Assembly: GCA_977017575.1 (NCBI GenBank)
Contig: CDRNVI010000034.1
Span: 62,001 to 126,000 of the forward strand
DNA: 64,000 nucleotides
Direction of reading: 5' to 3'
Origin: Paramoeba atlantica
Lineage: Eukaryota > Protista > Discosea
Positions 4,234-25,334 of this stretch are shown in pieces. The position numbers and the translations under genes are program-made. Position 1 is the first letter of the stretch. Every line of letters begins with the position of its first letter. The notes beneath the pieces are model-generated. The model was not told the DNA's origin. It did no database searches and saw only the letters and a program-made list of their open reading frames with translations.

Positions 4234-4686
4234 TTAATATCCTAGTATTTGCTCGCGCATACGCTTTCCTTTTTCTTCATATACCTTCTTTCTATGTAGA
4301 GGAAGCTCACGCCACATCAATCCCGCCCTCTTACCCATCTGTTTAGTACTCATGCCTCGTTTCTGAAGCTCTGGTCGTACCTCCTTAAAAAACATCAAAT
4401 AGGGGTTACACTTGGCAAATTGAGAAAGACGTTTCTTTTGTACCTTTGGATCGACGTGTACCTTTAGTTTATCCACTTTAGGAAGATGAGCTGCGTTGTA
4501 CTCAGCGGCTTTTTTCACATACTCCTCACGACATGCCTTTGGCAAGCCTCTGTACATGACTCCCAGTGCTTTGGCTATTTCGGCTACAGTATAATTTGGG
4601 TTTTCCTTCCGTACAATGGCCCGATTATCCTTCAGAAACGCGAAGAAAGCAGAAAGTCTTTGAAGGGTTACGCTGCGACACAACAT
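4234..4686 (-). CDS. Two-HMG-box protein with a mitochondrial-type N-terminus (kinetoplast-associated KAP-like)
   Basis: First ATG at 4686 gives MLCRSVTLQRLSAFFAFLKDNR..PNYTVAEIAKALGVMYRGL..REEY, then a second box NPYLMFFKEVRPEL..KQMGKRAGLMWREL..RKKVYEE. Confidence 0.8.
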   Translation of the reverse strand: MLCRSVTLQRLSAFFAFLKDNRAIVRKENPNYTVAEIAKALGVMYRGLPKACREEYVKKAAEYNAAHLPKVDKLKVHVDPKVQKKRLSQFAKCNPYLMFFKEVRPELQKRGMSTKQMGKRAGLMWRELPLHRKKVYEEKGKRMREQILGY

Positions 4687-5003
4687 AAACAGGACGAAAA
4701 GAGAAAAAAGGTTTCGAATTACTAAACCCAACTTGAAGAAAAAAGACCCAGAATAAGATCCATGATATCATCCTAAGAAGCTTTATGATATCACCATAAG
4801 AAAGATCTCAGATCAAGAGGTAGACTCTTATCTCGCATTTCACATTTTTGTTTAAAATCGAAATGGTTATTGCTTCTTTCGAAGCCTACCCATACCCTCC
4901 TTCGTCCTATGGCGCAACCCATTCACAAAAATTACGTTTCTTCCCTCGAGAAGGCGATACTCTAAAAAAAGGGAACCTCTCAGATAACCCCCCCCCCCCT
5001 CAA

Positions 5004-7799
5004 TCATTTTTGATCCAAGACTTGCACCGTCCCCAGCGGAGGGGCCACCTGGAGTACGGGGATGTACTGCAACACGGTCTGTCCCTCCTCTACGAACGGG
5101 AGGAGTCGAAGACAGCCCGCGACCAGAACCGTGCTCCCCTCTGTGAGCCCGGAGTGACTCAGGTACTCGGAGGCAAACCCCAGGGAGCCGTCCAGGCACA
5201 ACACGTGTAACACCTCATCGGCCTCCTCAAGTGCATCCGAAGAGGGAGAGAGGCAGGGAGAGGAAGGAGAAGTAAAAGTAGGCAAAGAAGAAGAAAAAGA
5301 AGAAGAAGCGTTCCGCAGGCGAATCGAGAAAAACCCTACACGGCTCTCGAAATAGTATCCCATGCCCAGTGGGGCGACACAGGACGCAATAAACACCGAA
5401 AAACTTCCACTCGCGGGGGTAAGATGAATGATGGCACTTTCCGGCACCGAGGGGTGTCGGGGTATCGGGTAGGGTAACAAGGGACGACAAAACGGGTGGG
5501 GTAACACCTCCACCTCAGGCTTGCTCTGTTTTGGTGTCTCCCCGGAGGCGACCTGGCTACGTATCTTATCTTCCCCTCCCGTACTTGAGGAAGGGGATGC
5601 CCGTAACAGCTCCTCAAAGCTTTTCGGGGCTACGACTACATCTTTGCGTCGTTGCGTCGTGCGGGAGGGGGAACCCGAAACCTCCCCCTCCATGGGTACA
5701 TCTCGTTTTTCTGACCCATGTGCCACCCCCCTATGCACGTTCAGCGCATCCTGAAACCGAAAGGATTTCCCACACACCTCACACGTGTACCGCAGCTCCG
5801 AGGCCGGAACCGTCTCTTTTACCCCCTGTCCCTGAGAGGTAAAGATATTAAACGGAACCCCTTGAACGGTTTTCTCAGAGCTAACCTCGGATAAAAAACC
5901 TTCTCCCGGTTTTATCCCCTCCTCAAGAGAAGAAGAAGAAGAAGAAGAAGACGAAGAAAAAGGAGAAGAACTCGTAAACAAGTTTGAACTCGAATACGAG
6001 GGTGTACTTCCCCCTATCCCACCCCCTTGTGGTACGGTCGTGGACATGGTGGTATGACCACTACTCGGACCACCCCCGGGCTGTCCACTGCCCCCTCCCG
6101 CCCCCACGGCCCCCATCTTCGCGAGCTCCCCCGTCGCGGTGACCACGAGCCCGTGCTTCGTGTTCGCGTGGTGCTGGAGCTGCACGATGGAGCGGAAGGA
6201 GCGGCGGCAGAGCGCGCAGACGTGGGCGCGCTCCCCGGTGGTGGGGACGACCGCGAGGGGGTCGGACCCGAGGGGGTACTCCCGGCTGCCGAGCATCCCG
6301 GGCAGCGCGGGGGAGGGGGGAGGGGGGAGGGTGTCGGAGGAGAGGGCGCGCAGGGCGTGGGAGAGGAGGGAGGGGGAGGGCGGAGAATACGAAGAATACG
6401 AAGAAGAAGAAAAAGAACCCCTTGCTCCCCTTATTCCTCCATGGTGTTTCGCGGTGTTGGAGGAAGAGGGAGAAAGGGTAGAGGGAGAAGAAAAAAAAGA
6501 AAAAGATCCTCTTGTTCTCCTTGTTCCTCTACCTCTATGTTGTTTCGCGGTGTTGGAGGAAGAGGGAGAAAGGGTAGAGGGAGAAGAAAAAAAAGAAAAA
6601 GATCCTCTTGTTCTCCTTATTCCTCTACCTCTATGTTGTTTCGCGGTGTTGGAGGAAGAGGGAGAAAGGGTAGAGGGAGAAGAAAAAAAAGAAAAGGATC
6701 CTCTTGTTCTCCTTATTCCTCTACCTCTATGTTGTTTCGCGGTGTTGGAGGAAGAGGGAGAAAGGGTAGAGGGAGAAGAAAAAAAAGAAAAAGGTCCTCT
6801 TGTTCTCCTTATTCCTCTACCTCTATGTTGTTTCGCGGTGTTGGAGGAAGAGGGAGAAAGGGTAGAGGGAGAAGAAAAAAAAGAAAAGGATCCTCTTGTT
6901 CTCCTTATTCCTCTACCTCTATGTTGTTTCGCGGTGTTGGAGGAAGAGGGAGAAAGGGTAGAGGAAGGAGAAAAAGGAGAGGAAAAGGGAGAAAAAGAGG
7001 AGTAGTCGGTTGTTCTCCCTTTTCCTCTACCTCTATGTTGTTTCGTGGTGTTGAGGGAAGGGGTAGAAACGGTAGAGGAAGGAGAAAAAGAAGAGGAAAA
7101 AGGGGAAGAAGGAGAAGAAGGGGAGTAGTCTGTTGTTGTACTTTTTTCTCTATGTTGTTGTTTCGTCGTGTTGGAGGAAGAGGAAGAAAATGTACTGTAA
7201 AAAACAGTAGAGTATGAAAAAATAGAGGAAGAAGAAAAAATAGAGTACGAAGAAGAAAAAGGAGAGTAGGAAAAGGTGAAAGGAAGGAGAGCGTGTGGGG
7301 GACGTACACGTTGCTGTTGTTGCTGTCGTCCATAGGGACGAGTGTAAGAGGCTTTCGTACAGCCCGTAGGGAGATACCCAAGCCCGAGCCTCACAAGTTC
7401 AAGCCTGGGCGAGGTGGAGGGCAGCAGAGCGTGTAGGGGACGTACACGTTGCTGTTGTTCATAAGGACGAGTGAGAGTTCCTCTGTACAGACGACTAGGA
7501 GTCTTAATATGGGAGTCGTCCATAAGGGGAATTCCCCTATGAGGAGAGTCCATACTTTGGCGCGCCCCGTTAAGATCGGGGAGTACGCGTTGTTGTCTTA
7601 CATAGGGACGAGTGTACGAGGTAGGGGGAAGGAGAGTGTGTAGGGGGAGCACCTGTTGTCGTTGTTGTCCATAATAACGAAGGGGATCGTGTGAGAGTCG
7701 TCCATAGGTGTGGGGAGAGAGGAGGACAGAGGGGGTGGAAAGAGGGGGGAGAGCAGAGGGGAGAGGGAAGGAGAGGTGGTGGGGGAAGGGGGGAGGCAT
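5004..7799 (-). CDS. KREPA3/MP42-like RNA-editing complex protein (two C2H2 zinc fingers plus C-terminal OB fold); conserved core 5004-6296, N-terminal extension uncertain
   Basis: Zinc fingers CALCRRSFRSIVQLQHHANTKH and CEVCGKSFRFQDALNVHRGVAH. The C-terminus GYYFESRVGFFSIRL..EGSTVLVAGCLRLLP..YIPVLQVAPPLGTV resembles the recalled KREPA OB fold. An internal ATG at 6296 gives a 430-aa protein. Confidence 0.7.
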   Translation of the reverse strand: MPPPFPHHLSFPLPSALPPLSTPSVLLSPHTYGRLSHDPLRYYGQQRQQVLPLHTLLPPTSYTRPYVRQQRVLPDLNGARQSMDSPHRGIPLMDDSHIKTPSRLYRGTLTRPYEQQQRVRPLHALLPSTSPRLELVRLGLGYLPTGCTKASYTRPYGRQQQQQRVRPPHALLPFTFSYSPFSSSYSIFSSSSIFSYSTVFYSTFSSSSSNTTKQQHREKSTTTDYSPSSPSSPFSSSFSPSSTVSTPSLNTTKQHRGRGKGRTTDYSSFSPFSSPFSPSSTLSPSSSNTAKQHRGRGIRRTRGSFSFFSSPSTLSPSSSNTAKQHRGRGIRRTRGPFSFFSSPSTLSPSSSNTAKQHRGRGIRRTRGSFSFFSSPSTLSPSSSNTAKQHRGRGIRRTRGSFSFFSSPSTLSPSSSNTAKQHRGRGTRRTRGSFSFFSSPSTLSPSSSNTAKHHGGIRGARGSFSSSSYSSYSPPSPSLLSHALRALSSDTLPPPPSPALPGMLGSREYPLGSDPLAVVPTTGERAHVCALCRRSFRSIVQLQHHANTKHGLVVTATGELAKMGAVGAGGGSGQPGGGPSSGHTTMSTTVPQGGGIGGSTPSYSSSNLFTSSSPFSSSSSSSSSSLEEGIKPGEGFLSEVSSEKTVQGVPFNIFTSQGQGVKETVPASELRYTCEVCGKSFRFQDALNVHRGVAHGSEKRDVPMEGEVSGSPSRTTQRRKDVVVAPKSFEELLRASPSSSTGGEDKIRSQVASGETPKQSKPEVEVLPHPFCRPLLPYPIPRHPSVPESAIIHLTPASGSFSVFIASCVAPLGMGYYFESRVGFFSIRLRNASSSFSSSLPTFTSPSSPCLSPSSDALEEADEVLHVLCLDGSLGFASEYLSHSGLTEGSTVLVAGCLRLLPFVEEGQTVLQYIPVLQVAPPLGTVQVLDQK
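6440..7200. repeat. 96-bp tandem repeat (about 5 near-identical copies plus degenerate flanking copies) inside the 931-aa ORF
   Basis: The unit TGTTGTTTCGCGGTGTTGGAGGAAGAGGGAGAAAGGGTAGAGGG... recurs every 96 nt (6538, 6634, 6730...). It translates as SSSNTAKQHRGRGIRRTRGSFSFFSSPSTLSP. Confidence 0.92.
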
Positions 7800-17361: not shown

Positions 17362-17452
17362 TGCGCAAAATATGACCCAGTTGTAAAAGATTGCGACGGG
17401 TCTAGGGAAGGGGTGGTTGCGAATTGTAAAAAAAATTATAAAAAATTAGATA

Positions 17453-17810
17453 CTCTTCCTCTCATTAATTTCTACAAATATAAATTATAACGAAATAGAA
17501 AATTTATAAAGGAAAATTTATAAGAATTTATAATTTATTTATATTTATAGAAATTAATGAGAATGATTAGGCAAAAAGTCCTGATCAGTGATCCTGCCTG
17601 ATGGAAAAACGCTGTTTTTCTGCGATAAACTATCGCGGAACGTGAGATCCAAGGCCCTTGTCGGAAGTGAGGGTCAAATTTTTCTGCGGTGTTCTCCCCT
17701 CTATCCTAGATTTTCCTGTTTTTTCTCCAAAAATATAATTTTTTGAAAATCTATAATTTTTTTTCTGAAAAATTAGGAATGGCATTTATAGAAATTAATG
17801 AGAAGAGGAG
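17453..17810. mobile_element. TA-target MITE
   Basis: TA|CTCTTCCTCTCATTAATTTCTA ... TAGAAATTAATGAGAAGAGGAG|TA. Confidence 0.7.
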
Positions 17811-18009
17811 TATACCCTCCATGATCATAAAAAAGGGTTGTGTGAAAAAAACACGGTAGGTTTAGAAAAACAAAAACAAAGAAAAGATTTTAAAAAAAAT
17901 TGTTTTTACTTATTCCAGTTTTCTCTTAAAAAGTGCATAAGAAAGCACGGTAACTTTAATTGTCCTTGCTTGTCAAAATTGTTTGAACCTGCTTGAAAAA
18001 CAGATTTTA

Positions 18010-19081
18010 CCGGTGAAACAGTTATTAAGGATAGAAGTAATTAAGGCAGAACAGATTTAAAAATTAATTATTGCCTTAATTAAAGTTGCCTTAATTAAAG
18101 TTGCCTTAATTGAAGTTGCCTTAATTAAAGTTGCCTTAATTGAAGTTGCCTTAATTAAAGTTGCTTAATTAAAGTTGCCTTAATTAAAGTGGCGCTGATA
18201 AAAGCCCAAAACAGTTCTTATTTAAATATTGTCGTTCGTAGCATAAATATCACATTTCTGCTAAAAGTGCTCAATTTCTGATCATTTGTCAAGTTTTTCG
18301 TGCTTTTCTAGACGAGCTTCGCCTGTTTCGCCTACCTTTACGGTCTTCAACCAGTTCAACGTGTGAGAGAAAAGCTAAAACGATCATTGAAAGGAGAAGT
18401 CTGAGACGGAATCATGAAATTAATTTTTCCCATTTTTTTCCCCAAAATGACAAAAAATTAATTATTGCCTTACCGGGCGTTACTTAATTACGGAATTTCT
18501 TAATTACGGTTAACGGTTAAAATTTCGTCGATTTTAACCCTAAATCGGTTAACCGTAATTAGGGAGTAACCGTAATTAAGAAATTCCGTAAATAGGGAAA
18601 ATCGGTTATGCGTTGCGCACAACGAATTTAAACATCAATGAAACTATAACGATCTACCATCAATATCGTGCATCTTATACCCACTAGATTCGAAAGTGCG
18701 CTGTCGCTTTCTTCTAGTGGTATCCGCATCATCGTTGCGTTCCTCGTAGTCAAATCCAAGCTAGAATGTTTCCAAGCCCCTCGTAATGCAATTATCTGAT
18801 ACTATGTCGCAACATGGTGGCGCATTCCACATTGCACCAGGAATGCCAGTCGCTCTATTCCTCGCCCAGGAGGCTTTCTGCTTCCTGATATTCCAGTCAC
18901 AGGGCACATAAAAATATTTTGCTCGGAAAATAGAAATGTCAGTTTTAACCTTAAATAGATTAACCGTAATTAGGTAAAAACCGTAAGTAAGGGCAACCGT
19001 AATTAAGTAACGCCCGGTAATTAAAGCTGCCTTAATTAAAGTTGCCCTAATTTTAATTACCCTTAATTGAAGTTTCTACGG
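18010..19081. mobile_element. TA-target MITE containing a 15-bp TTAATTAAAGTTGCC array and a nested MITE
   Basis: Imperfect TIRs CCGGTGAAAC..ATTAAGG / CCTTAATTGAAGTTTCTACGG with TA flanks. About 8 copies of the 15-mer at 18074-18190. Confidence 0.55.
18473..19017. mobile_element. Nested TA-target MITE (545 bp)
   Basis: TA|CCGGGCGTTACTTAATTACGG ... CCGTAATTAAGTAACGCCCGG|TA, perfect 21-bp TIRs. Confidence 0.85.
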
Positions 19082-19256
19082 TATATCATGTTTTAATTGA
19101 ATTAGTCTTCCATGCAATTCTTTATGCAAAAGAAATTTCTACACGAGCTTAACTTAGAACACGAATTTTCGTGTATTCAAAGGCCTTGCATTTCAGCGTT
19201 TCCGGTAGTAAATCGACATGAACTTCTCCCGTAAGCTCGGAGTTGCCACGAAGTTT

Positions 19257-20505
19257 GTTTTTTCATGCACTTATAGTGCAGAGATTTGCCTCACTACATG
19301 TCCTTACCCGCATACGACGGGTGGATCAAGTGAGGGTTCGCCCTCGCCGGAGGTGTGCGGGTGCAGAGAGCTGGGGTCCCAGGTGCAGAGAGCTCGGTTG
19401 TCATGTGCAGGTGCAGAGAGCCGGATGCGTAATCCCCATATTACAGTTTCGGGGGCAATCCGGGTGCAGAGAGCTGCGACAGAGCCGAGGTGCAGAGAGC
19501 TGGGCGACCCCCAGGTGCAGAGAGCCGGGAGTCTCGTCGGCGGAGGATACGCCTAGTGGCCCTCAAGGGAGGACACCGTGACGCATGGCCTCTTCGGAAA
19601 GGTAATTGCGAGAGAAGGGGAAGCCGAGAGAGGGAAACACACACTCCAGGGGAGTGATTCGGGAAGGGGTGAAGGGGTGGAAGCGCGTCCCCTGCTTCAA
19701 CAATGGAGGGGGTGCAGACAGTACCTGTAGGTCGCTGTCGAACGGTGATGACCGATGGCGACCGGTGACGACCGATGGCGACCGGTGGCGAACGCTGTAG
19801 GCATTTTTTGAGGTTCGAAGGATCGACCATTAACCATACAAGTCTTCATAAACCACCCTTCATAAATAAGGCACCCCACCTTATTTTTGGCACAACAACG
19901 AAGGCCCCACACAAGCCGCGCTCGTCGTTTTTTGCAACAAGCTCCGGCGTTAGGGTTTCCACGTCTTGCGCTTTATGGCGTTCGAGGAAGAGGTTTTTTC
20001 CCATTGGGACGCACGTCGCGGAACAGTGAACGCAACGTTCCACAAATTACCCTTCTTCGCCGGAGGGCTGGCGGCAATCGAGGCAGACGGATGGCGTTTT
20101 CAAAGTGAACAGCTTATCTTCCCAGGTATCACAAAATTTCTTAGCACAGCGAGAAGTTTGCATTAATGGAACTAAGAAAAATAGTCGGGAATGTATAAAT
20201 TGGTGGTGTATAAAATGCTAAATTGTTTTTGCTGATGTATAATTATATTGATCAGTCGGTCATAAAGTTGAGCATTTTGGTCTTCAAAGTGTCGTTTTCT
20301 GGGAGTCGGTGACGACCGGTGGCGAACGCTGTAGGTATTTTTTGAGACCGTCGAAGGGCCACTTGCACTCCCTCCAATAGAGAGGGACAGTTTCGGCCTT
20401 AGTGCCGGCCGGAAACGGGCATAAAAATACAGTAAGAGTATGCCCGTTGCCGGGGAAAGAAAGGATAAACTCAACAAGGTACAGAAACTGTATCTTTATC
20501 GATGA
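19257..20505 (-). mobile_element. SL-headed insertion E1 (contains a nested MITE)
   Basis: On the minus strand it starts TCATCGATAAAGATACAGTTTCTGTACCTTGTTG, continues with the CCGG(C/A)AACGGGCAT hairpin, and ends GCATGAAAAAAC. It is homologous to E2 at both ends. Confidence 0.75.
19705..20375. mobile_element. MITE with 3-bp AAT target duplication (PIF/Harbinger- or CACTA-like target length) nested in E1
   Basis: AAT|GGAGGGGGTGCA ... TGCACTCCCTCC|AAT. Removing it restores colinearity of E1 with E2 (GCGTCCCCTGCTTC..AGAGGGACAGTT versus GCGCACCCCTACTTT..AGAGGGACAGTT). Confidence 0.75.
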
Positions 20506-20643
20506 AAGACTTACAAGTGCAGAAGGAAGGAGAGTAAGTGTTACATGACCACTTAGCTCATTCGCCGACAGAATTAATGAAACTAGCTTTGACGGAAGGT
20601 GACAAAGATCAATGATTCCCGAGAACTTATTGTACGAGGCTGT

Positions 20644-21393
20644 GTTTTTTCATGCAGGGCGAGACCTGCAGAGATATGTAGGCCCAGCAGAGGTAGGCGC
20701 AATCAACGCTCCCTGCTGGTCCTTTTTGCCTTTCTCGGCGACACAGGGAAGTGCGCGGGATATCTGCCCCGGGAAGGCGAAGAGAGGCGGCCTCATCGGG
20801 ATAAGATGTCCCGAGATGCTCAGCGAGCGCAATGCGCCAGGGAAGACATACGGATTTGTAGGACGCGGATGGTATTCCCATCGTACATGCTACAAATGAC
20901 TTCCATGGTTCATGATACAACATGGTCAGGGCCATGGATGCATGCTGGCAAATGGAGTCATGGTTCATGATGCATCATGGGCATCGGGGTCCCACCGAAT
21001 CCGCCACGGCTGGTGAGCAAGAGAGGTGCATAGAACATCCTCTAGAACACGCATGCAACGTGTTTGCTCGCCGTGTGGGAGACTTCCGGTATATGGAAGC
21101 CTCCTGCGCGCAGCAGTACCGGTGTCGCGCGATGGGGAAGACACGCCACGTGGTCCCGTAGTAGGGTCCTGCAGCGCATGGGGACTCGGAACCATGTTCC
21201 GAGCGGGGTGGTGGGAGATGAAGAAAGGGAGGCGCACCCCTACTTTGCGACAAGAGGGACAGTTCCTCTCCTAGCGCCATCCGGAAACGGGCATTGACAT
21301 AGTAAAAATATGCCCGTTTCCGGGAGAGAAATGATGAGCTAGGAAAATGTACCAACGAGGTACAGAAACTGTATCTTTATCGTTAAAACCGTC
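20644..21393 (-). mobile_element. SL-headed insertion E2 (750 bp)
   Basis: On the minus strand it starts ..TTTTAACGATAAAGATACAGTTTCTGTACCTCGTTGGTAC, has a perfect 14-bp stem at 21281-21294/21310-21323, and ends GCATGAAAAAAC. Confidence 0.75.
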
Positions 21394-21987
21394 AAACCAA
21401 GATAAATGGGGTGGAAGGTTTACGAGATCAATCTCACCTCTAAGTTTGTTGTTGGATACGGAGAATCGGATGAGTGATCTCGGCAGCACGTCCCACTGAA
21501 TCGTGCCTCGTAATTTACGACTCTCTGGATCAAACGCGGTGATTTTGTTTTCATAAGCCTGAACCCCTTCCCATATATCGGCTGTCATGGATGTGTTCCA
21601 AGAGGGAAGGTGATTCTCAATGGTACGTACCATACGCTCGAGACCGTACTCCAGGGGTAGGAGCACACTTCTGACTCTCCCCGCTTTTGCATCCCCACTA
21701 CTCGTATCGGAACAAATAAGAACGTTTGAAGAAGCTTGGCCACATGGCAACTGCAAAAAGCACATGTTGAACTATTTTGAAAAATTATGAAAAAAGAGTT
21801 CGAAGGAGTCCGCTTTAAGGGCTATGCGCCTGAATAAAGATAGATCTTGGAAAGTATAGGCGTATGAATATTTAGTTTCTTCAACATGGTACATTAGAAT
21901 GTAAACATCGGATTATCTATTTCTAACCGCGATCCTTTCGCATTAGAAAAATGTAAGTCACTAGAAGAATGTACATCACTTCATGAC

Positions 21988-24900
21988 TTACTGTGACAAG
22001 ACCCTTCTGGCTTCCTTCATTTCAGATAAAACAGTAGGAGAAAAGATATTTTCTGTGTTTCCTGGCATGGAGGAACGCTCCAAGTAACTGGCACGTCGCG
22101 TGGGCTTCAGAGTCTTGTCCAATATATTTACTGTTTGTTTTTTCTCTGCCGGACGAAGCTCGGGGTTCGATAGTGCGAGAGAGGAACTTATTGTGTCCGA
22201 CAGCGCGCAAAGCCGTTTGCTTTCATCCGACGTGAGTTCAGCTTGAATGACCCAATACTCTTTTCGATCCAGCCCTTGTGCGACAGCATCCTGTGATACA
22301 AATTTCGAATCTTGTTTTATCTTTTCTTCACTCCTAATCTGAAGTTTGCATGAGAGATAGACTCCATGAAAAGTACCACCGGTTGTGGTCACGAGAAGTG
22401 GACCACTTAATTCAGTTTTCAAAGACGAGGAAGAAGAAGATGAAGTAGACGAAGGTAGAGAAGAATCAAGCCCACTGGGAGCTTTACTTCTCACCGGTTC
22501 CAGCGACTGAGCCCATTCTAACTCTGTAAGGGGGGGCAATGGAAGATGCGCCCCATGGCCTGCGTTTTCCATCGAAGCATCATATGAATTTCGCATCTCG
22601 CCGTAGTAATCACAGAAGAAGCGCGCGTCAATATACGAATTTCGAATAAGGTAATCCATCGCCTCTGGGGGTAGCTGTATTACTCGGGAAGAGCCAAGGT
22701 AGGGAGCCAGGAGCTGAGCTCCAATGATGTTGAGCGTTCGCCCATCTTTTTGAGTGACTACACACACGGCTGCGGGCTTCTGTGCTCGTTTAATTGCAAG
22801 AGACATCGATTGAGCCTCGCGAGATTTTCTGTGCCCTCCGTTTTCGATGTTTTGCTGAAACCACGAAGCTTCTTTTGTCATGGCACTCCACGACCCGTCG
22901 TTGTTTTTACAAAACGTGTAATAGTGAAACAGATTCGGCAGCACTGTGAAGGGATAGAGGACTTGATTGGAAAAAGCTTCGTCGAACGTAGAAGCGGGGC
23001 ACTTGTCTGGGAAAGGGCGTTCCAAGACTTGCTCTTCTGGCGTTGTGGAAGGCGCTACTTTCTGAAACAGTGCAAAAAAGAATCCCGTTTTAAAGGAACG
23101 ATTCTCATGGGGAAGAAGCCGTGCGCACTGCTCGAGATTATCGCTCGCTGAGCAAAATAATTCTGTAAAATTCGAAATCGTACGCAATGGGGAATCCCAC
23201 GCAACCTCTTCAATTGCGGACACAAATCGTTTAAGATGACCCCTGTGTTTATCCGATTCGGTTCGGTTTTCAGCGTAATGTGGCACACACCAGCGACGCA
23301 GCCCCGGACGAAGGCAAACCCCCGAGAAAGAGCTCGGAAGATTTACGTGCCTTAGCTCTACAGAGCCAGCATACTCCCGCAACACAGAGGCCACCACAGC
23401 CTCATTCTCCACAGGGTTGAGACTGCAAGTGGAGTACAGTACACTCCCCCCTACATGGACCAGTCGTAGTGCGCGAGATAAGATTGCGCGCTGGGTGTTA
23501 AAAAGGGTTACCCCCTCGAACGGTCGCCACGTGGCGTTAAGATGAACATCATGACCCATGCGCCCGTCTCCGGAACAAGGGACATCGGCGAGAACGAAAT
23601 CAAAAAACGAACCGCTCGGTTCTACGGTTTGTGACAACGTGAGGGGGTTAGAACTCCACCGGTCGTGTTGTGGGACAACATTGTTGCCTAACACTGTAAT
23701 GTCTTTTGATGCCGTTTTCTCCTCCCCTCTCTCCTCCTCTGGCTGCACACGAACCAGTGGAAAATGCTGTGCGTCATACTGCGTAAGCAGCACTTGAGGA
23801 AACGGAGCTAACGATAACCGTTTCTCCAGATCCCCCCTGCGTGGGCTGTTTTTATCATTCACCACCAGCACCCCTCGCCTTCCGAGGCACTCCGCGAGAC
23901 GCAGTGCTTTATTCCCCGGAGCCGCACATAAGTCCAACACGAAACTCCCGGGTCGGATTCGCGCCCCCAAAAGTGCCGTAGCCAACACCGAACTTAAGGA
24001 TTGAATCCCTAAAAGGTGATGGGTGTGAAGTCGATAGAGCCAACTTTTCATCAAAGGCTCATAGGCAACAAAAACCTCACGTGGAAGATGCGCAAGACAG
24101 GCCTTTTTATTATTTCCCAAGTTTGTTGAATGGATGGAACCCTTCGCATCCCCTACACTCTCAGAGGGTTGTGGCCATCTCCCCATCCTTTGTAGTTTTC
24201 CCTCTAATCCATTCATTGGAGCCTTCCCCTCCTTGGCCTCAAAGGAAGACGCGTAATATTTATTACGCTGCTGCAACTGCAGAAGTGCGGTGCGTAGCCT
24301 TTTCCAATACGGCCACGCGGTGTGGAGCCGTGCCGTTAGGGGGGCATTGAGGTCAATGGGATTTTCAGAACTTCTGTTCTGAACAAAAGAAGAGGTTGTT
24401 GTTGCTGTTGTTGTTTCAGATAGGTAAGCTTGATAGGCAGCTACATCCGCAGCGCTGTGGAGTACGCCTTGCCGGTGGTAGTAGGCGAGGAGCGTATGGC
24501 TGCGATGGGAGGGGAGAGGGAAGGAGAGAGACACGAGATGGGGGGGATAGGGGTGGGAGATTTGAAATTCATGGGAAAGTGTTTTTAGCATGTCGGCGGC
24601 CGTGGTCGTGTCGGGGCTTTGGGGGGAGATCGTAGGGGATTCGGGAAGCAGAGGGGGGAGTTCGGTGGAGGTGGTTCGGTTCGTTTTGGAGCGCAGCTCG
24701 GCGGGGAGGACGGGAAAAAGGGTGCGGGCGAGGAGAAAGGGGTGAATCCCACAACGAAGGGCGAGTTGGTAGTGCTCCACCCCAAGAGGGAATGCAGCTT
24801 CGTTTTTGCAGTAGTGCATAATGCGAAGAGCGTTGTGCCACTGCCGGGTTCGACGTGCGGCAAGAAGAACTGTACTTAGCGTTGCGGGAGTAAGGCGACC

Positions 24901-24999
24901 TTTCGCGTCGTACATTCGAATTTGCCGATGAAGCGACAGAGGGGAGGGGGTGCCGAGGAGGTCGTGCGCCATTTGCTGAATTCGACCGTAAACGTTCAT
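21988..24999 (-). CDS. NSUN2/Trm4-like RNA m5C methyltransferase (RsmB/NOP2 family)
   Basis: VLDLCAAPGNKA, FDFVLADVPCSGDG, LYSTCSLNPVENEAVV (both catalytic Cys), RLLPHE..TGFFFALF. Confidence 0.92.
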   Translation of the reverse strand: MNVYGRIQQMAHDLLGTPSPLSLHRQIRMYDAKGRLTPATLSTVLLAARRTRQWHNALRIMHYCKNEAAFPLGVEHYQLALRCGIHPFLLARTLFPVLPAELRSKTNRTTSTELPPLLPESPTISPQSPDTTTAADMLKTLSHEFQISHPYPPHLVSLSFPLPSHRSHTLLAYYHRQGVLHSAADVAAYQAYLSETTTATTTSSFVQNRSSENPIDLNAPLTARLHTAWPYWKRLRTALLQLQQRNKYYASSFEAKEGKAPMNGLEGKLQRMGRWPQPSESVGDAKGSIHSTNLGNNKKACLAHLPREVFVAYEPLMKSWLYRLHTHHLLGIQSLSSVLATALLGARIRPGSFVLDLCAAPGNKALRLAECLGRRGVLVVNDKNSPRRGDLEKRLSLAPFPQVLLTQYDAQHFPLVRVQPEEERGEEKTASKDITVLGNNVVPQHDRWSSNPLTLSQTVEPSGSFFDFVLADVPCSGDGRMGHDVHLNATWRPFEGVTLFNTQRAILSRALRLVHVGGSVLYSTCSLNPVENEAVVASVLREYAGSVELRHVNLPSSFSGVCLRPGLRRWCVPHYAENRTESDKHRGHLKRFVSAIEEVAWDSPLRTISNFTELFCSASDNLEQCARLLPHENRSFKTGFFFALFQKVAPSTTPEEQVLERPFPDKCPASTFDEAFSNQVLYPFTVLPNLFHYYTFCKNNDGSWSAMTKEASWFQQNIENGGHRKSREAQSMSLAIKRAQKPAAVCVVTQKDGRTLNIIGAQLLAPYLGSSRVIQLPPEAMDYLIRNSYIDARFFCDYYGEMRNSYDASMENAGHGAHLPLPPLTELEWAQSLEPVRSKAPSGLDSSLPSSTSSSSSSSLKTELSGPLLVTTTGGTFHGVYLSCKLQIRSEEKIKQDSKFVSQDAVAQGLDRKEYWVIQAELTSDESKRLCALSDTISSSLALSNPELRPAEKKQTVNILDKTLKPTRRASYLERSSMPGNTENIFSPTVLSEMKEARRVLSQ

Positions 25000-25334
25000 T
25001 TTAGTCTATCTTGGTTGAGAAAAACTGGAAAAGGGAAAAACACTATTCTTAACGATCATGCATAATTGTGGCGCTAGGCCTGTATGTCAAGGCTTCATCG
25101 AGTTACAAAAATTAAGAAGAGTGCGCTTCGCATCAAACTGCAATATGAATACTTTACATGTTGTTTTAATCGAAGAAAAAAATATGCGATATTCAATAGT
25201 GATAACCGAAAACATATGAGCGGAGCCGATAAAAAAGTAGCTCCGCGTCAAAAAGTGCGCTGAGCGCCGAGACGTCCATACATGTACCTACGGGTCAAGG
25301 TCCTTTGCTCAAGTTCGGTGTAAGCCGTTTTAAC

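What the first reader, a model, noticed from the sequence alone, without database searches (positions are those of the whole stretch)
19257..21393. Two related insertions that begin with a spliced-leader-like sequence and end in an A-rich tail
Seen: on the minus strand, E2 begins AACGATAAAGATACAGTTTCTGTACCTCGTTG|GTAC (21384-21353) and E1 begins TCGATAAAGATACAGTTTCTGTACCTTGTTG|AGT (20503-20472). Both continue into the same 14-bp stem (CCGGAAACGGGCAT/ATGCCCGTTTCCGG), share about 170 nt, diverge centrally, and end TGCATGAAAAAAC. Known: the euglenozoan SL exon ends in ACAGTTTCTGTACT(T/A)TATTG followed by GT, and SLACS/CRE/CZAR elements insert into SL genes. Inference: the reverse arrangement appears here, with an SL head carried into a protein gene. 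This suggests an SL-RNA-derived SINE-like family or retrocopies of a trans-spliced structured ncRNA. A sense-oriented SL copy might also act as a cis splice donor.
Basis: partly seen in the sequence, partly recalled or inferred. Interest (0 to 1): 0.85.

Follow-up and report, generated by a model that had tools for sequence, protein, structure and literature searches.

The report
Spliced-leader-headed SINEs in an LRR gene
Two non-coding mobile elements that begin with a copy of the host's own spliced leader have landed in a leucine-rich-repeat gene of a kinetoplastid-like protist. They belong to a family copied by R2-like retrotransposons that carry the same leader at their 5' end and the same hairpin at their 3' end.

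Summary
E2 (window 20642-21391, minus strand, 750 nt) and E1 (about 20502-19254, about 1,249 nt) interrupt one LRR gene. With both removed, the gene is collinear and gap-free with an intact paralogue.

- **The head is the true leader.** An environmental contig carries an SL RNA gene about 400 nt from a 5S rRNA gene, and its exon has the same sequence.
- **The head is not the SL RNA gene.** That gene continues GTATGAGAAGC after the exon; E1 and E2 do not.
- **They are a dispersed family.** Contigs of the same organism hold young copies of the E1 family (97-99% alike), fragments of the E2 family, and two families of R2-like LINEs (reverse transcriptase, CCHC, restriction-like endonuclease).
- **Shared ends.** All start inside the leader, always joined to the body right after ...CCTTGTTG. 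All end in ..CTC, a 5-7 bp stem, TGA(T/A)A and a short tail. Five different stems stay complementary.
- **Insertion features.** There are no target duplications and no terminal inverted repeats. E2 is missing from a second haplotype.

My reading: these are SINE-like retroposons copied from trans-spliced RNAs by these LINEs. A role of the leader copy as a cis-splice donor has no support. The scan's first readers had already noted similar leader-headed elements elsewhere in this genome.

The parts
20642..21391 (-). E2: complete non-coding retroposon of the E2 subfamily, 750 nt
   Evidence: A contig in both runs joins 20641 to 21392. Related copies at 88-92% identity lie in L001 and L002. Its ORFs match only spurious ORFs in other copies.
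21353..21391 (-). E2 head: four unassigned letters (CGGT), then leader nt 4-38 with one C/T difference
   Evidence: Alignment with the SL RNA gene of L012. The leader is 38 nt if it starts AAC, as published euglenozoan leaders do (PMC3795323).
21248..21352 (-). E2 structured 5' domain. The 14-bp hairpin arms are 21310-21323/21281-21294. The anti-leader segment GGAACTGTCCCTCTTGTCG is at 21248-21266.
   Evidence: Single-sequence fold z = -7.2. Consensus fold of 9 copies has 5 compensated pairs. Duplex with the leader is -23 kcal/mol against -13 +/- 2.6 for shuffles.
20642..20676 (-). E2 3' module: ATCTC, stem TGCAGG/CCTGCA (20665-20670/20653-20658), then TGAAAAAACAC
   Evidence: Same layout in five families, each with a different complementary stem.
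19254..20505 (-). E1: older member of the S subfamily, about 1,249 nt; each end is ambiguous by 3 nt
   Evidence: 86% (head) and 90% (3' 450 nt) identical to the 588-nt copy S4 in L004. Collinearity with P0003 leaves one codon at the junction.
20472..20503 (-). E1 head: leader from about nt 7-10 to nt 38, 5'-truncated
19699..20380 (-). 682-nt extra segment inside E1, absent from canonical family members; origin unknown
   Evidence: High-depth contigs skip 19699-20380. S4 lacks it. No tRNA and no match in the fetched loci.
19254..19285 (-). E1 3' module: ATCTC, stem TGCACT/AGTGCA (19275-19280/19266-19271), then TGAAAAAAC(AAA)
21392..21765 (-). Host LRR gene, first part (N-terminal cap and first repeats)
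20506..20641 (-). Host LRR gene, middle part, between E2 and E1
19149..19253 (-). Host LRR gene, last part with the stop codon

Best explanation
E1 and E2 are two independent insertions of non-autonomous, SINE-like retroposons. They come from two subfamilies of one superfamily.

**Anatomy.** Each RNA has three parts:
- the host's spliced-leader exon at its 5' end;
- a structured, non-coding 5' domain in which the leader core pairs with an internal anti-leader segment around a 14-bp hairpin;
- a 3' module made of ..CTC, a short stem-loop, TGA(T/A)A and a short A-rich tail.

**Partner.** The same 5' leader and 3' module are carried by R2-like LINEs of the same genome. These encode one ORF of about 1,500 aa with Cys-rich N-terminal repeats, a reverse transcriptase, a CCHC motif and a restriction-like endonuclease.

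**Inferred mechanism.**
- The source RNA receives the leader by normal trans-splicing.
- The LINE protein recognises the 3' stem-loop.
- It nicks the target and copies the RNA back to, or nearly to, its capped 5' end.
- This gives variable 5' truncation inside the leader and no target duplication.

**Consequence here.** Both inserts lie in sense orientation at the same position of successive LRR units and break the reading frame, so this allele is probably a pseudogene.

**Shown:** the anatomy, the family, the partner's domains, the identity of the leader and the E2-less haplotype.
**Inferred:** trans-splicing as the source of the leader, mobilisation in trans, and the target preference.
For: **Leader identity.**
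- L012 holds ...AACTTTAACGATAAAGATACAGTTTCTGTACCTTGTTG|GTATGAGAAGC about 400 nt from a 5S rRNA gene that scores 98 bits.
- E2 matches it over 38 nt at 97%.
- The head bins have about 450-640 times the depth of unique sequence.

**Same junction, different bodies.** SINEs continue GTAC(T/A)TTTT... after the leader. LINEs continue AATTATTTT..., then a short UTR and the ATG.

**Family.**
- Five S-family copies are 97-99% alike and have different flanks.
- Their 5' ends fall at different leader positions, and one copy is truncated at nt 144.

**Partner LINE.**
- The reverse transcriptase hits R2 proteins best, at 1.8e-17.
- CCHC, RHN and RPD..E..K..KY motifs lie downstream of it.
- One copy has an intact 1,561-aa ORF.

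**3' module.** It has the same layout in five families, with five different complementary stems.

**Head structure.** It has compensatory changes.

**Empty site.**
- An E2-less contig has depth 30.5, beside two flank variants of 32.8 and 29.3.
- Allelic contigs exist in the assembly.
- An intact paralogue is collinear across both insertion sites.

**No transposon ends.** No TIRs were found and no TSDs.
Against: - No RNA evidence was obtained. The kind of the two runs is not on record, so neither transcription of the elements nor a fresh leader on their RNA is shown.
- Daughter copies have ...TTG, not AG, in front of the body. They cannot be re-spliced at the same place, so how the family keeps an intact leader over many cycles is unexplained.
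- The stems of E1 and E2 match neither LINE A nor LINE B, so their actual partner is not identified.
- The SL RNA gene comes from an environmental contig, not from the window's own assembly.
- The tool marks the E2-less junction as possibly holding unknown letters between the two sides.
Confidence: 0.78

Rival explanations
1. The leader at the 5' end comes from co-transcription, not trans-splicing. Master copies would sit inside SL RNA genes, as CRE/SLACS/CZAR elements do. They would be transcribed from the SL promoter, and the copies in LRR genes would be off-target daughters.
For: The partner is an RLE-type LINE, the same broad type as the SL-gene-specific CRE clade (PMC12278014). In three SINE subfamilies the three letters after the exon (GTA) equal the first three of the SL RNA intron. 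This model would explain why the leader stays intact over generations.
Against: Two unrelated kinds of body, LINE and SINE, are joined at exactly the exon's last base, which is what trans-splicing predicts. CRE-clade elements insert at one fixed place inside the SL RNA gene (PMC12278014), not at the exon-intron boundary. No copy seen here has SL gene sequence on its 3' side. LINE bodies do not start with GTA.
Confidence: 0.1
2. The SINE head is a retro-copied SL RNA (exon plus intron), so this is an SL-RNA-derived SINE in the strict sense.
For: GT follows the exon in E2, S4 and S11. The leader's CUGUACC pairs with the following GGUAC, rather like stem-loop I of SL RNAs; the fold is and the comparison is from my own knowledge.
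Against: The SL RNA gene continues GTATGAGAAGC..., unlike the SINE beyond 3 nt. The hairpin-module bins are about 10 times shallower than the leader bins in X1 and 100 times in X2. Rfam gives no match. The LINEs carry the leader without any GT.
Confidence: 0.06
3. E1 and E2 are, or act as, spliceosomal introns of the LRR gene (introner-like), with the leader copy helping as a donor.
For: E2 can be read as G|GTTTTA...CACAG|C, in frame. A contig lacking E2 exists in both runs.
Against: That contig's junction reads ...TTTGA|AGCC..., one base off the GT-AG product. It also carries 3-10% differences in the flanks and sits at half the depth in X1, like a second haplotype. E1 has no AG between its in-frame stop and the exon. 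An S copy inside a Brr2-like gene cannot be removed in frame either.
Confidence: 0.03

Closest known systems
CRE clade LINEs of trypanosomatids (SLACS, CZAR, CRE1, CRE2)
   Same: Kinetoplastid hosts. A single ORF with reverse transcriptase, zinc-finger-like motifs and a restriction-like endonuclease. An intimate link with the spliced leader (PMC12278014).
   Different: CRE elements sit at one fixed position inside SL RNA genes and make target duplications. Here the elements are dispersed, often in LRR genes. They carry the whole leader on the 5' side only and make no duplications. The nearest database relatives at 27-33% identity are unnamed or animal proteins, so CRE affinity is not shown.
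R2 elements and other RLE LINEs
   Same: Best structural-database matches of the reverse transcriptase. CCHC plus PD-(D/E)xK endonuclease after the RT. Untidy 5' junctions and no regular target duplication. End-to-end joining of two templates, as in LINE B abutting S11 in L011, fits the template jumping known for the R2 enzyme (from my own knowledge).
   Different: R2 targets 28S rDNA and frees its 5' end with a ribozyme. No known ribozyme was found here, and the 5' end is the spliced leader.
Stringent LINE/SINE pairs that share a 3' stem-loop (for example eel UnaL2/UnaSINE1; from my own knowledge)
   Same: The non-autonomous partner shares only the 3' recognition stem-loop and tail with the LINE.
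   Different: Classical SINE heads are Pol III genes (tRNA, 7SL, 5S). Here the head is a Pol II trans-spliced leader plus a domain that pairs with it.
Relict spliced leaders in dinoflagellate retrogenes (PMC5585692)
   Same: DNA copies of trans-spliced RNAs that keep the leader at their 5' end. A possible stacked remnant occurs in L002, where TACCTTGTTG is repeated.
   Different: Those are retro-copied host genes. Here the leader heads dedicated mobile-element families, both autonomous and non-autonomous.
ingi/RIME and L1Tc/NARTc pairs of trypanosomes (PMC4748587)
   Same: LINE plus non-coding partner in a genome with polycistronic transcription.
   Different: Those have an APE endonuclease, the shared 77-nt Pr77 promoter/ribozyme at the 5' end, and 12-bp target duplications. 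None of this is seen here.

Membership tests
LINE-dependent non-autonomous retroposon (SINE in the broad sense) | No coding capacity of its own | tested here: met
   Only short ORFs. Their only database matches are spurious ORFs in other copies, or none at all.
LINE-dependent non-autonomous retroposon (SINE in the broad sense) | Many dispersed copies with unrelated flanks and 5' truncation | tested here: met
   Depth is 20-60 times the unique level. There are 5 S copies and 3 E2-family copies, with varied 5' ends.
LINE-dependent non-autonomous retroposon (SINE in the broad sense) | 3' end shared with an autonomous LINE of the same genome | tested here: met
   Shared as a motif plus structure (..CTC, stem, TGA(T/A)A, tail), not as identical sequence. 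The exact partner of E1 and E2 was not found.
LINE-dependent non-autonomous retroposon (SINE in the broad sense) | Presence/absence at an otherwise conserved site | tested here: met
   E2-less contig in both runs. Gap-free collinearity with paralogue P0003 across both sites.
Classical SINE | Head derived from a Pol III gene (tRNA, 7SL, 5S) with an internal promoter | tested here: not met
   No tRNA, no Rfam family. The head is the spliced-leader exon.
Classical SINE | Target-site duplications | tested here: not met
   None at any of about 10 junction pairs.
CRE/SLACS/CZAR clade | RT plus restriction-like endonuclease in the autonomous element | tested here: met
   This applies to the partner LINEs, not to E1 or E2.
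CRE/SLACS/CZAR clade | Insertion at one fixed position inside SL RNA genes | tested here: not met
   Copies lie in LRR genes, intergenic DNA, TA repeats and a helicase gene. The leader is on the 5' side only.
CRE/SLACS/CZAR clade | Phylogenetic grouping with CRE reverse transcriptases | tested here: inconclusive
   Of the ten non-self hits whose names were looked up, none carries a SLACS or CZAR name. Two are animal proteins and eight are unnamed. No tree with CRE references could be built.
SL RNA gene or SL-RNA-derived element | Exon followed by the SL RNA intron | tested here: not met
   The gene has GTATGAGAAGC...; the elements have GTAC(T/A)TTTT..., AGTTTATCC... or AATTATTTT....
Retrocopy of a trans-spliced RNA | Leader joined to the body exactly at the exon's last base | tested here: met
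   12 of 13 aligned sequences, across two kinds of body. S7 has a 4-nt deletion there.
Retrocopy of a trans-spliced RNA | A source locus where the body follows a pyrimidine tract and AG | not testable with these tools
   This needs a whole-genome search. Only about 120 kb of the genome could be fetched.
Spliceosomal intron / introner | GT..AG ends, removal in frame, spliced RNA observed | tested here: not met
   E2 only nearly fits and E1 does not. The skipping contig behaves as a haplotype.
DNA transposon / MITE | Terminal inverted repeats | tested here: not met
   Best end-to-end inverted alignment scores 5 for E2 and 7 for S4, below the shuffle means of 6.4 and 7.7.

The most novel reading that the evidence does not exclude
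The leader is a working part of the element rather than a passive scar. Both the SINE head and the LINE 5' UTR keep a segment complementary to the leader. The leader is far better conserved than its surroundings between diverged families. Daughter copies lack an AG acceptor, yet the family keeps a clean leader end.

One reading that fits is that the R2-like enzyme defines the element's 5' end by switching template onto leader-bearing RNA, or that the anti-leader recruits SL RNA. Either way the element would regain a capped leader in every cycle without a conventional splice site.

A second strand of the same reading is that these LINEs are site-preferring for one position of the LRR coding repeat.
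Probability: 0.2. Interest if true: 0.85.

Novelty: new variant of a known kind. Interest (0 to 1): 0.66.

Why it matters
In kinetoplastids, mRNAs normally need the capped spliced leader to be translated, and genes have no promoters of their own. A retrotransposon therefore has to solve both problems.
- Two solutions are known from the literature: an internal promoter with a ribozyme (ingi/L1Tc), and living inside SL RNA genes (CRE/SLACS).
- These elements suggest a third. The element lets the host trans-splice its RNA and then carries the leader along as part of its own sequence, with SINE partners doing the same.
- The copies are DNA records of trans-spliced RNAs. They may even record how the reverse transcriptase read the modified cap nucleotides.
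- The elements are a source of LRR gene decay, and of presence/absence differences between haplotypes, in a little-studied protist.
- The leader/anti-leader helix and the covarying 3' stem-loop are concrete, testable RNA signals.

Tried and rejected
- **Rfam.** Nothing relevant at gathering threshold over the whole window or at permissive E-values over 19200-21450. No SL RNA, ribozyme or snRNA family matched.
- **tRNA scan.** The extra segment inside E1 gave nothing.
- **Protein searches.** A search with an ORF from the 3' part of E1 found nothing. The exact look-up of the 1,003-aa neighbour was not on record.
- **Atlas and PDB searches.** The atlas search with the RT gave only generic RT clusters. 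The PDB search with the endonuclease region gave only noise, so that domain rests on motifs read by eye.
- **Literature.** No paper prints this leader variant. I found no description of leader-headed LINE/SINE pairs in kinetoplastids, but the library is incomplete.
- **LINE 3' end.** I first read the 3' 450 nt of E1 as the 3' end of the LINE in L004. This was wrong: an LRR fragment separates the LINE's own tail from a separate SINE copy.
- **Intron in the Brr2-like gene.** I considered that the antisense S copy in that gene might be a new GT..AG intron. No in-frame splice exists.
- **Organism.** I could not name it. Its ribosomal protein eS1 scores higher against plant and Euglena proteins than against trypanosomatid ones. 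The gene layout is one-stranded and shows no interrupted ORFs.
- **Earlier findings by sequence.** That search was blank.
Full report
**1. What is in the window**

On the minus strand an LRR gene starts at 21765 and is interrupted twice.
The leader-like 16-mer occurs only at these two places, against 0.37 expected by chance.
- All ORFs of at least 180 aa that carry a recognisable host domain lie on the minus strand. They include a zinc-finger protein, LRR proteins, a PCIF1-like protein, RF-1, SURF1 and an RsmB-like methyltransferase, and none is visibly interrupted.
- Both inserts are therefore in sense orientation within a one-stranded gene cluster.

**2. Boundaries and the host gene**

- I placed one X at each junction and aligned the three coding pieces with an intact 208-aa paralogue of the same organism (P0003). 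From residue 13 to the end the alignment has no gap. Each insert therefore sits within one codon of an otherwise complete gene.
- Contigs of two public runs were laid on the region. In both runs one contig joins 20641 to 21392, skipping exactly 750 nt.
- In run X1 that contig has depth 30.5. The flank just upstream splits into two variants of depth 32.8 (identical to the window) and 29.3 (11 differences in 150 nt). Unique sequence, including the centre of E1, sits at about 52.
- Window proteins have exact matches and second, at least 90% identical copies on other contigs of one ENA assembly.
- I read this as two haplotypes, one with E2 and one without. E1 appears to be in both.
- The kind of the runs is not on record. 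X1 has a 228-kb contig and flat depth over exons and the E1 centre, so it looks like DNA.
- The tool warns that unknown letters might lie between the two sides of the junction.

**3. The head is the true spliced leader, not the SL RNA gene**

- One scan of public metagenome contigs for the last 20 nt of the head gave a single contig, L012.
- It reads ...AACTTTAACGATAAAGATACAGTTTCTGTACCTTGTTG followed by GTATGAGAAGC.
- It lies about 400 nt from a 5S rRNA gene that scores 98 bits. Linkage of SL RNA and 5S genes is a classical feature of many kinetoplastids (from my own knowledge).
- The exon differs from all 14 published euglenozoan leaders in a review table (PMC3795323) in its last 8 nt and in a 5' half about 1 nt shorter. 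It keeps their invariant core.
- E2 matches this gene over 38 nt at 97%. E1, the other SINE copies and the LINEs match from various internal positions.
- After the exon the gene and the elements part company. Only GTA is shared with three SINE subfamilies, and nothing is shared with the LINEs.
- Depth agrees with this. The leader bins reach 33,380 and 23,837 in X1, and the next bins with the hairpin module reach 3,122 and 1,580. In X2 the figures are 4,999 against 50.

**4. A family, and its autonomous partner**

The window is all I was given of this genome. I reached more of it through spurious ORFs that gene callers had predicted inside other copies and fetched their contigs.
- **S family.** Five copies are 97-99% alike and 588 nt when complete.
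  - E1 is an older member, about 90% identical.
  - E1 also carries a 682-nt extra segment that canonical members lack.
- **E2 family.** Two fragments are 88-92% identical to E2.
- **S11.** A third subfamily.
- **LINE A and LINE B.** Each has one long ORF; the intact ones are 1,561 and 1,484 aa.
  - The reverse transcriptase matches R2 proteins better than L1, at 1.8e-17 against 2.3e-9.
  - Downstream lie a C-x2-C-x8-H-x4-C motif, RHN, and RPD...E...K..KY, the marks of a restriction-like endonuclease.
  - The N-terminus has four C-x3-C-x6-C-x-H-x-CC repeats with no Pfam match.
- Both LINEs start inside the leader. They continue AATTATTTT..., a 40-45 nt UTR and the ATG, which is how a trans-spliced mRNA would look.

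**5. Shared ends**

- **5' ends.**
  - In 12 of the 13 aligned sequences the junction between leader and body is exactly after ...TTG; S7 has a 4-nt deletion there.
  - The 5' limit varies. It is near nt 1 in E2, nt 7-19 in the other copies that keep a leader, and nt 144 of the SINE in L010.
  - This is the pattern of incomplete reverse transcription.
- **E2's first letters.**
  - E2 has leader nt 4-38 preceded by CGGT.
  - This puts three mismatched letters where nt 1-3 would be, plus one extra letter.
  - In kinetoplastids these positions are the heavily methylated cap-4 nucleotides (from my own knowledge). This could be a trace of the enzyme reading through a real cap, but it is a single case.
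- **3' ends.**
  - All five families end in ..CTC, a stem of 5-7 bp, a loop of 3-6 nt, TGA(T/A)A and a short A- or TA-rich tail.
  - The stems are all different and all complementary: TGTAGAA/TTCTACA, TATCT/AGATA, TGCACT/AGTGCA, TGCAGG/CCTGCA, and TGCGC/GCGTA with one G-T.
  - This is the signature of a 3' recognition hairpin shared by a LINE and its SINEs.
- **Neither transposon hallmark.** No target duplications were seen at any junction, and no terminal inverted repeats.

**6. The SINE head is a structured RNA that includes the leader**

- The heads fold far better than shuffles, with z of -5.2 and -7.2.
- The consensus fold of nine copies has three nested helices:
  - the leader core ACAGUUUC pairs with an internal GGAACUGU;
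  - a middle helix;
  - the 14-16 bp hairpin.
- Five pairs show changes on both sides that keep pairing. One example is A-U in the E2 type against C-G in the S type within the hairpin, with E1 as a mismatched intermediate. Near-identical S copies count several times, so the independent lineages number about three.
- The leader-to-body duplex is about -23 kcal/mol against -13 +/- 2.6 for shuffles in three SINE subfamilies. It is weaker but present in LINE B at p = 0.01, and not significant in LINE A at p = 0.11.

**7. Where they land**

- Five of about eleven insertions are in LRR genes: E2, E1, LINE A in L004 and L005, and S4.
- All five are in sense, and all lie 21-27 nt after the start of the Leu-Pro codons of an LRR unit of about 70 nt.
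- In the window and in L004 two elements sit in successive units of one gene.
- The other copies lie in intergenic DNA, beside TA repeats, inside another LINE, or antisense in a Brr2-like helicase gene.
- RLE LINEs are typically site-specific (PMC12278014 for the CRE clade). A preference for this spot is plausible, but it rests on five cases chosen after the fact.

**8. What remains open**

- How the leader is kept is not explained. A daughter copy has TTG, not AG, before the body, so it cannot be re-spliced at the same point.
  - Possible answers are a few master loci with a proper acceptor, master copies in SL RNA genes, or template switching onto leader-bearing RNA.
  - L001 (two partial leaders in a row) and L002 (the last 10 nt of the leader repeated) show that something of that sort happens at the 5' end.
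  - In L011 the tail of LINE B abuts the leader of S11 directly. This is what end-to-end template jumping would give.
- No RNA evidence was obtained.
- The LINE that moved E1 and E2 was not found.

**9. Comparison and verdict**

- The elements work like a stringent LINE/SINE pair driven by an R2-like enzyme.
- They are not members of the CRE/SLACS/CZAR group in the defining sense, because they do not sit in SL RNA genes.
- They are not classical SINEs, having no Pol III head and no target duplication. They are not SL RNA genes and not introns.
- Leader-bearing retrocopies are known from dinoflagellate genes (PMC5585692). I found no description of dedicated LINE and SINE families headed by the leader in the searchable literature.
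- First readers of this scan noted the same kind of element in other windows of this genome. One follow-up reported a leader joined at an AG inside another element. These notes are not independent evidence, but they agree with what I tested here.

Noticed in passing
L010:3001-3446: A 5'-truncated S-family copy lies antisense inside a Brr2/SNRNP200-like helicase gene, which is normally essential. It starts GT and ends AG in the gene's sense, but no in-frame removal exists. This allele looks disrupted, perhaps with a small target deletion.
   Followed up: partly
window:19699-20380 (minus strand): A 682-nt segment inside E1 is absent from canonical family members. It has near-unique depth and a 40-nt direct repeat (92% identity) at 20307-20346 and 19773-19812. 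No tRNA and no match in the fetched loci; origin unknown.
   Followed up: partly
L012:1-568: Environmental contig with an SL RNA gene (cut by the contig end), a divergently oriented 5S rRNA gene about 400 nt away, and tRNA-like T-arm fragments between them. No complete tRNA was called.
   Followed up: partly
L004:10600-11500; P0006 N-terminal third: The LINE ORF starts with four repeats of C-x3-C-x6-C-x-H-x-CC(K/Q). They match no Pfam family and are a candidate DNA-binding or targeting domain.
   Followed up: no
L011:10459-11170: The tail of LINE B (TGATATCATCATC) directly abuts the leader of a SINE-like unit, S11, whose own tail is TGATATCATATATCATATC... This could be a chimera made by template jumping, or a nested insertion.
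   Followed up: partly
L011:11629-11700; L002:7100-7140 (minus strand): A second kind of leader-like sequence, with ACCG in place of ACAG, does not continue to the leader's normal end. In L011 it is followed by GGTTCGAA, the tRNA T-loop motif. It may belong to the tRNA-derived SINEs that other readers noted.
   Followed up: no
L008:2099-3103; L011:1242-2354 and 4600-5697; window:12597-13781: Tc1/mariner-like (HTH_Tnp_Tc3_2, DDE_3) and DDE_1 transposase ORFs lie close to the LINEs and in the window. The genome also carries DNA transposons.
   Followed up: no
L001:4336-4380; L002:6325-6354: Irregular 5' ends. L001 has a partial leader followed by a second, nearly whole one. L002 has the last 10 nt of the leader repeated in tandem.
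   Followed up: partly
window 17400-25300: Exact protein look-ups place the gene at 16.6-17.4 kb on a 28-kb ENA contig and the genes from 25.3 kb onward on an 89-kb contig. The ORFs at 21.3-25.0 kb are not on record. That assembly seems to break or differ around E1 and E2.
   Followed up: no
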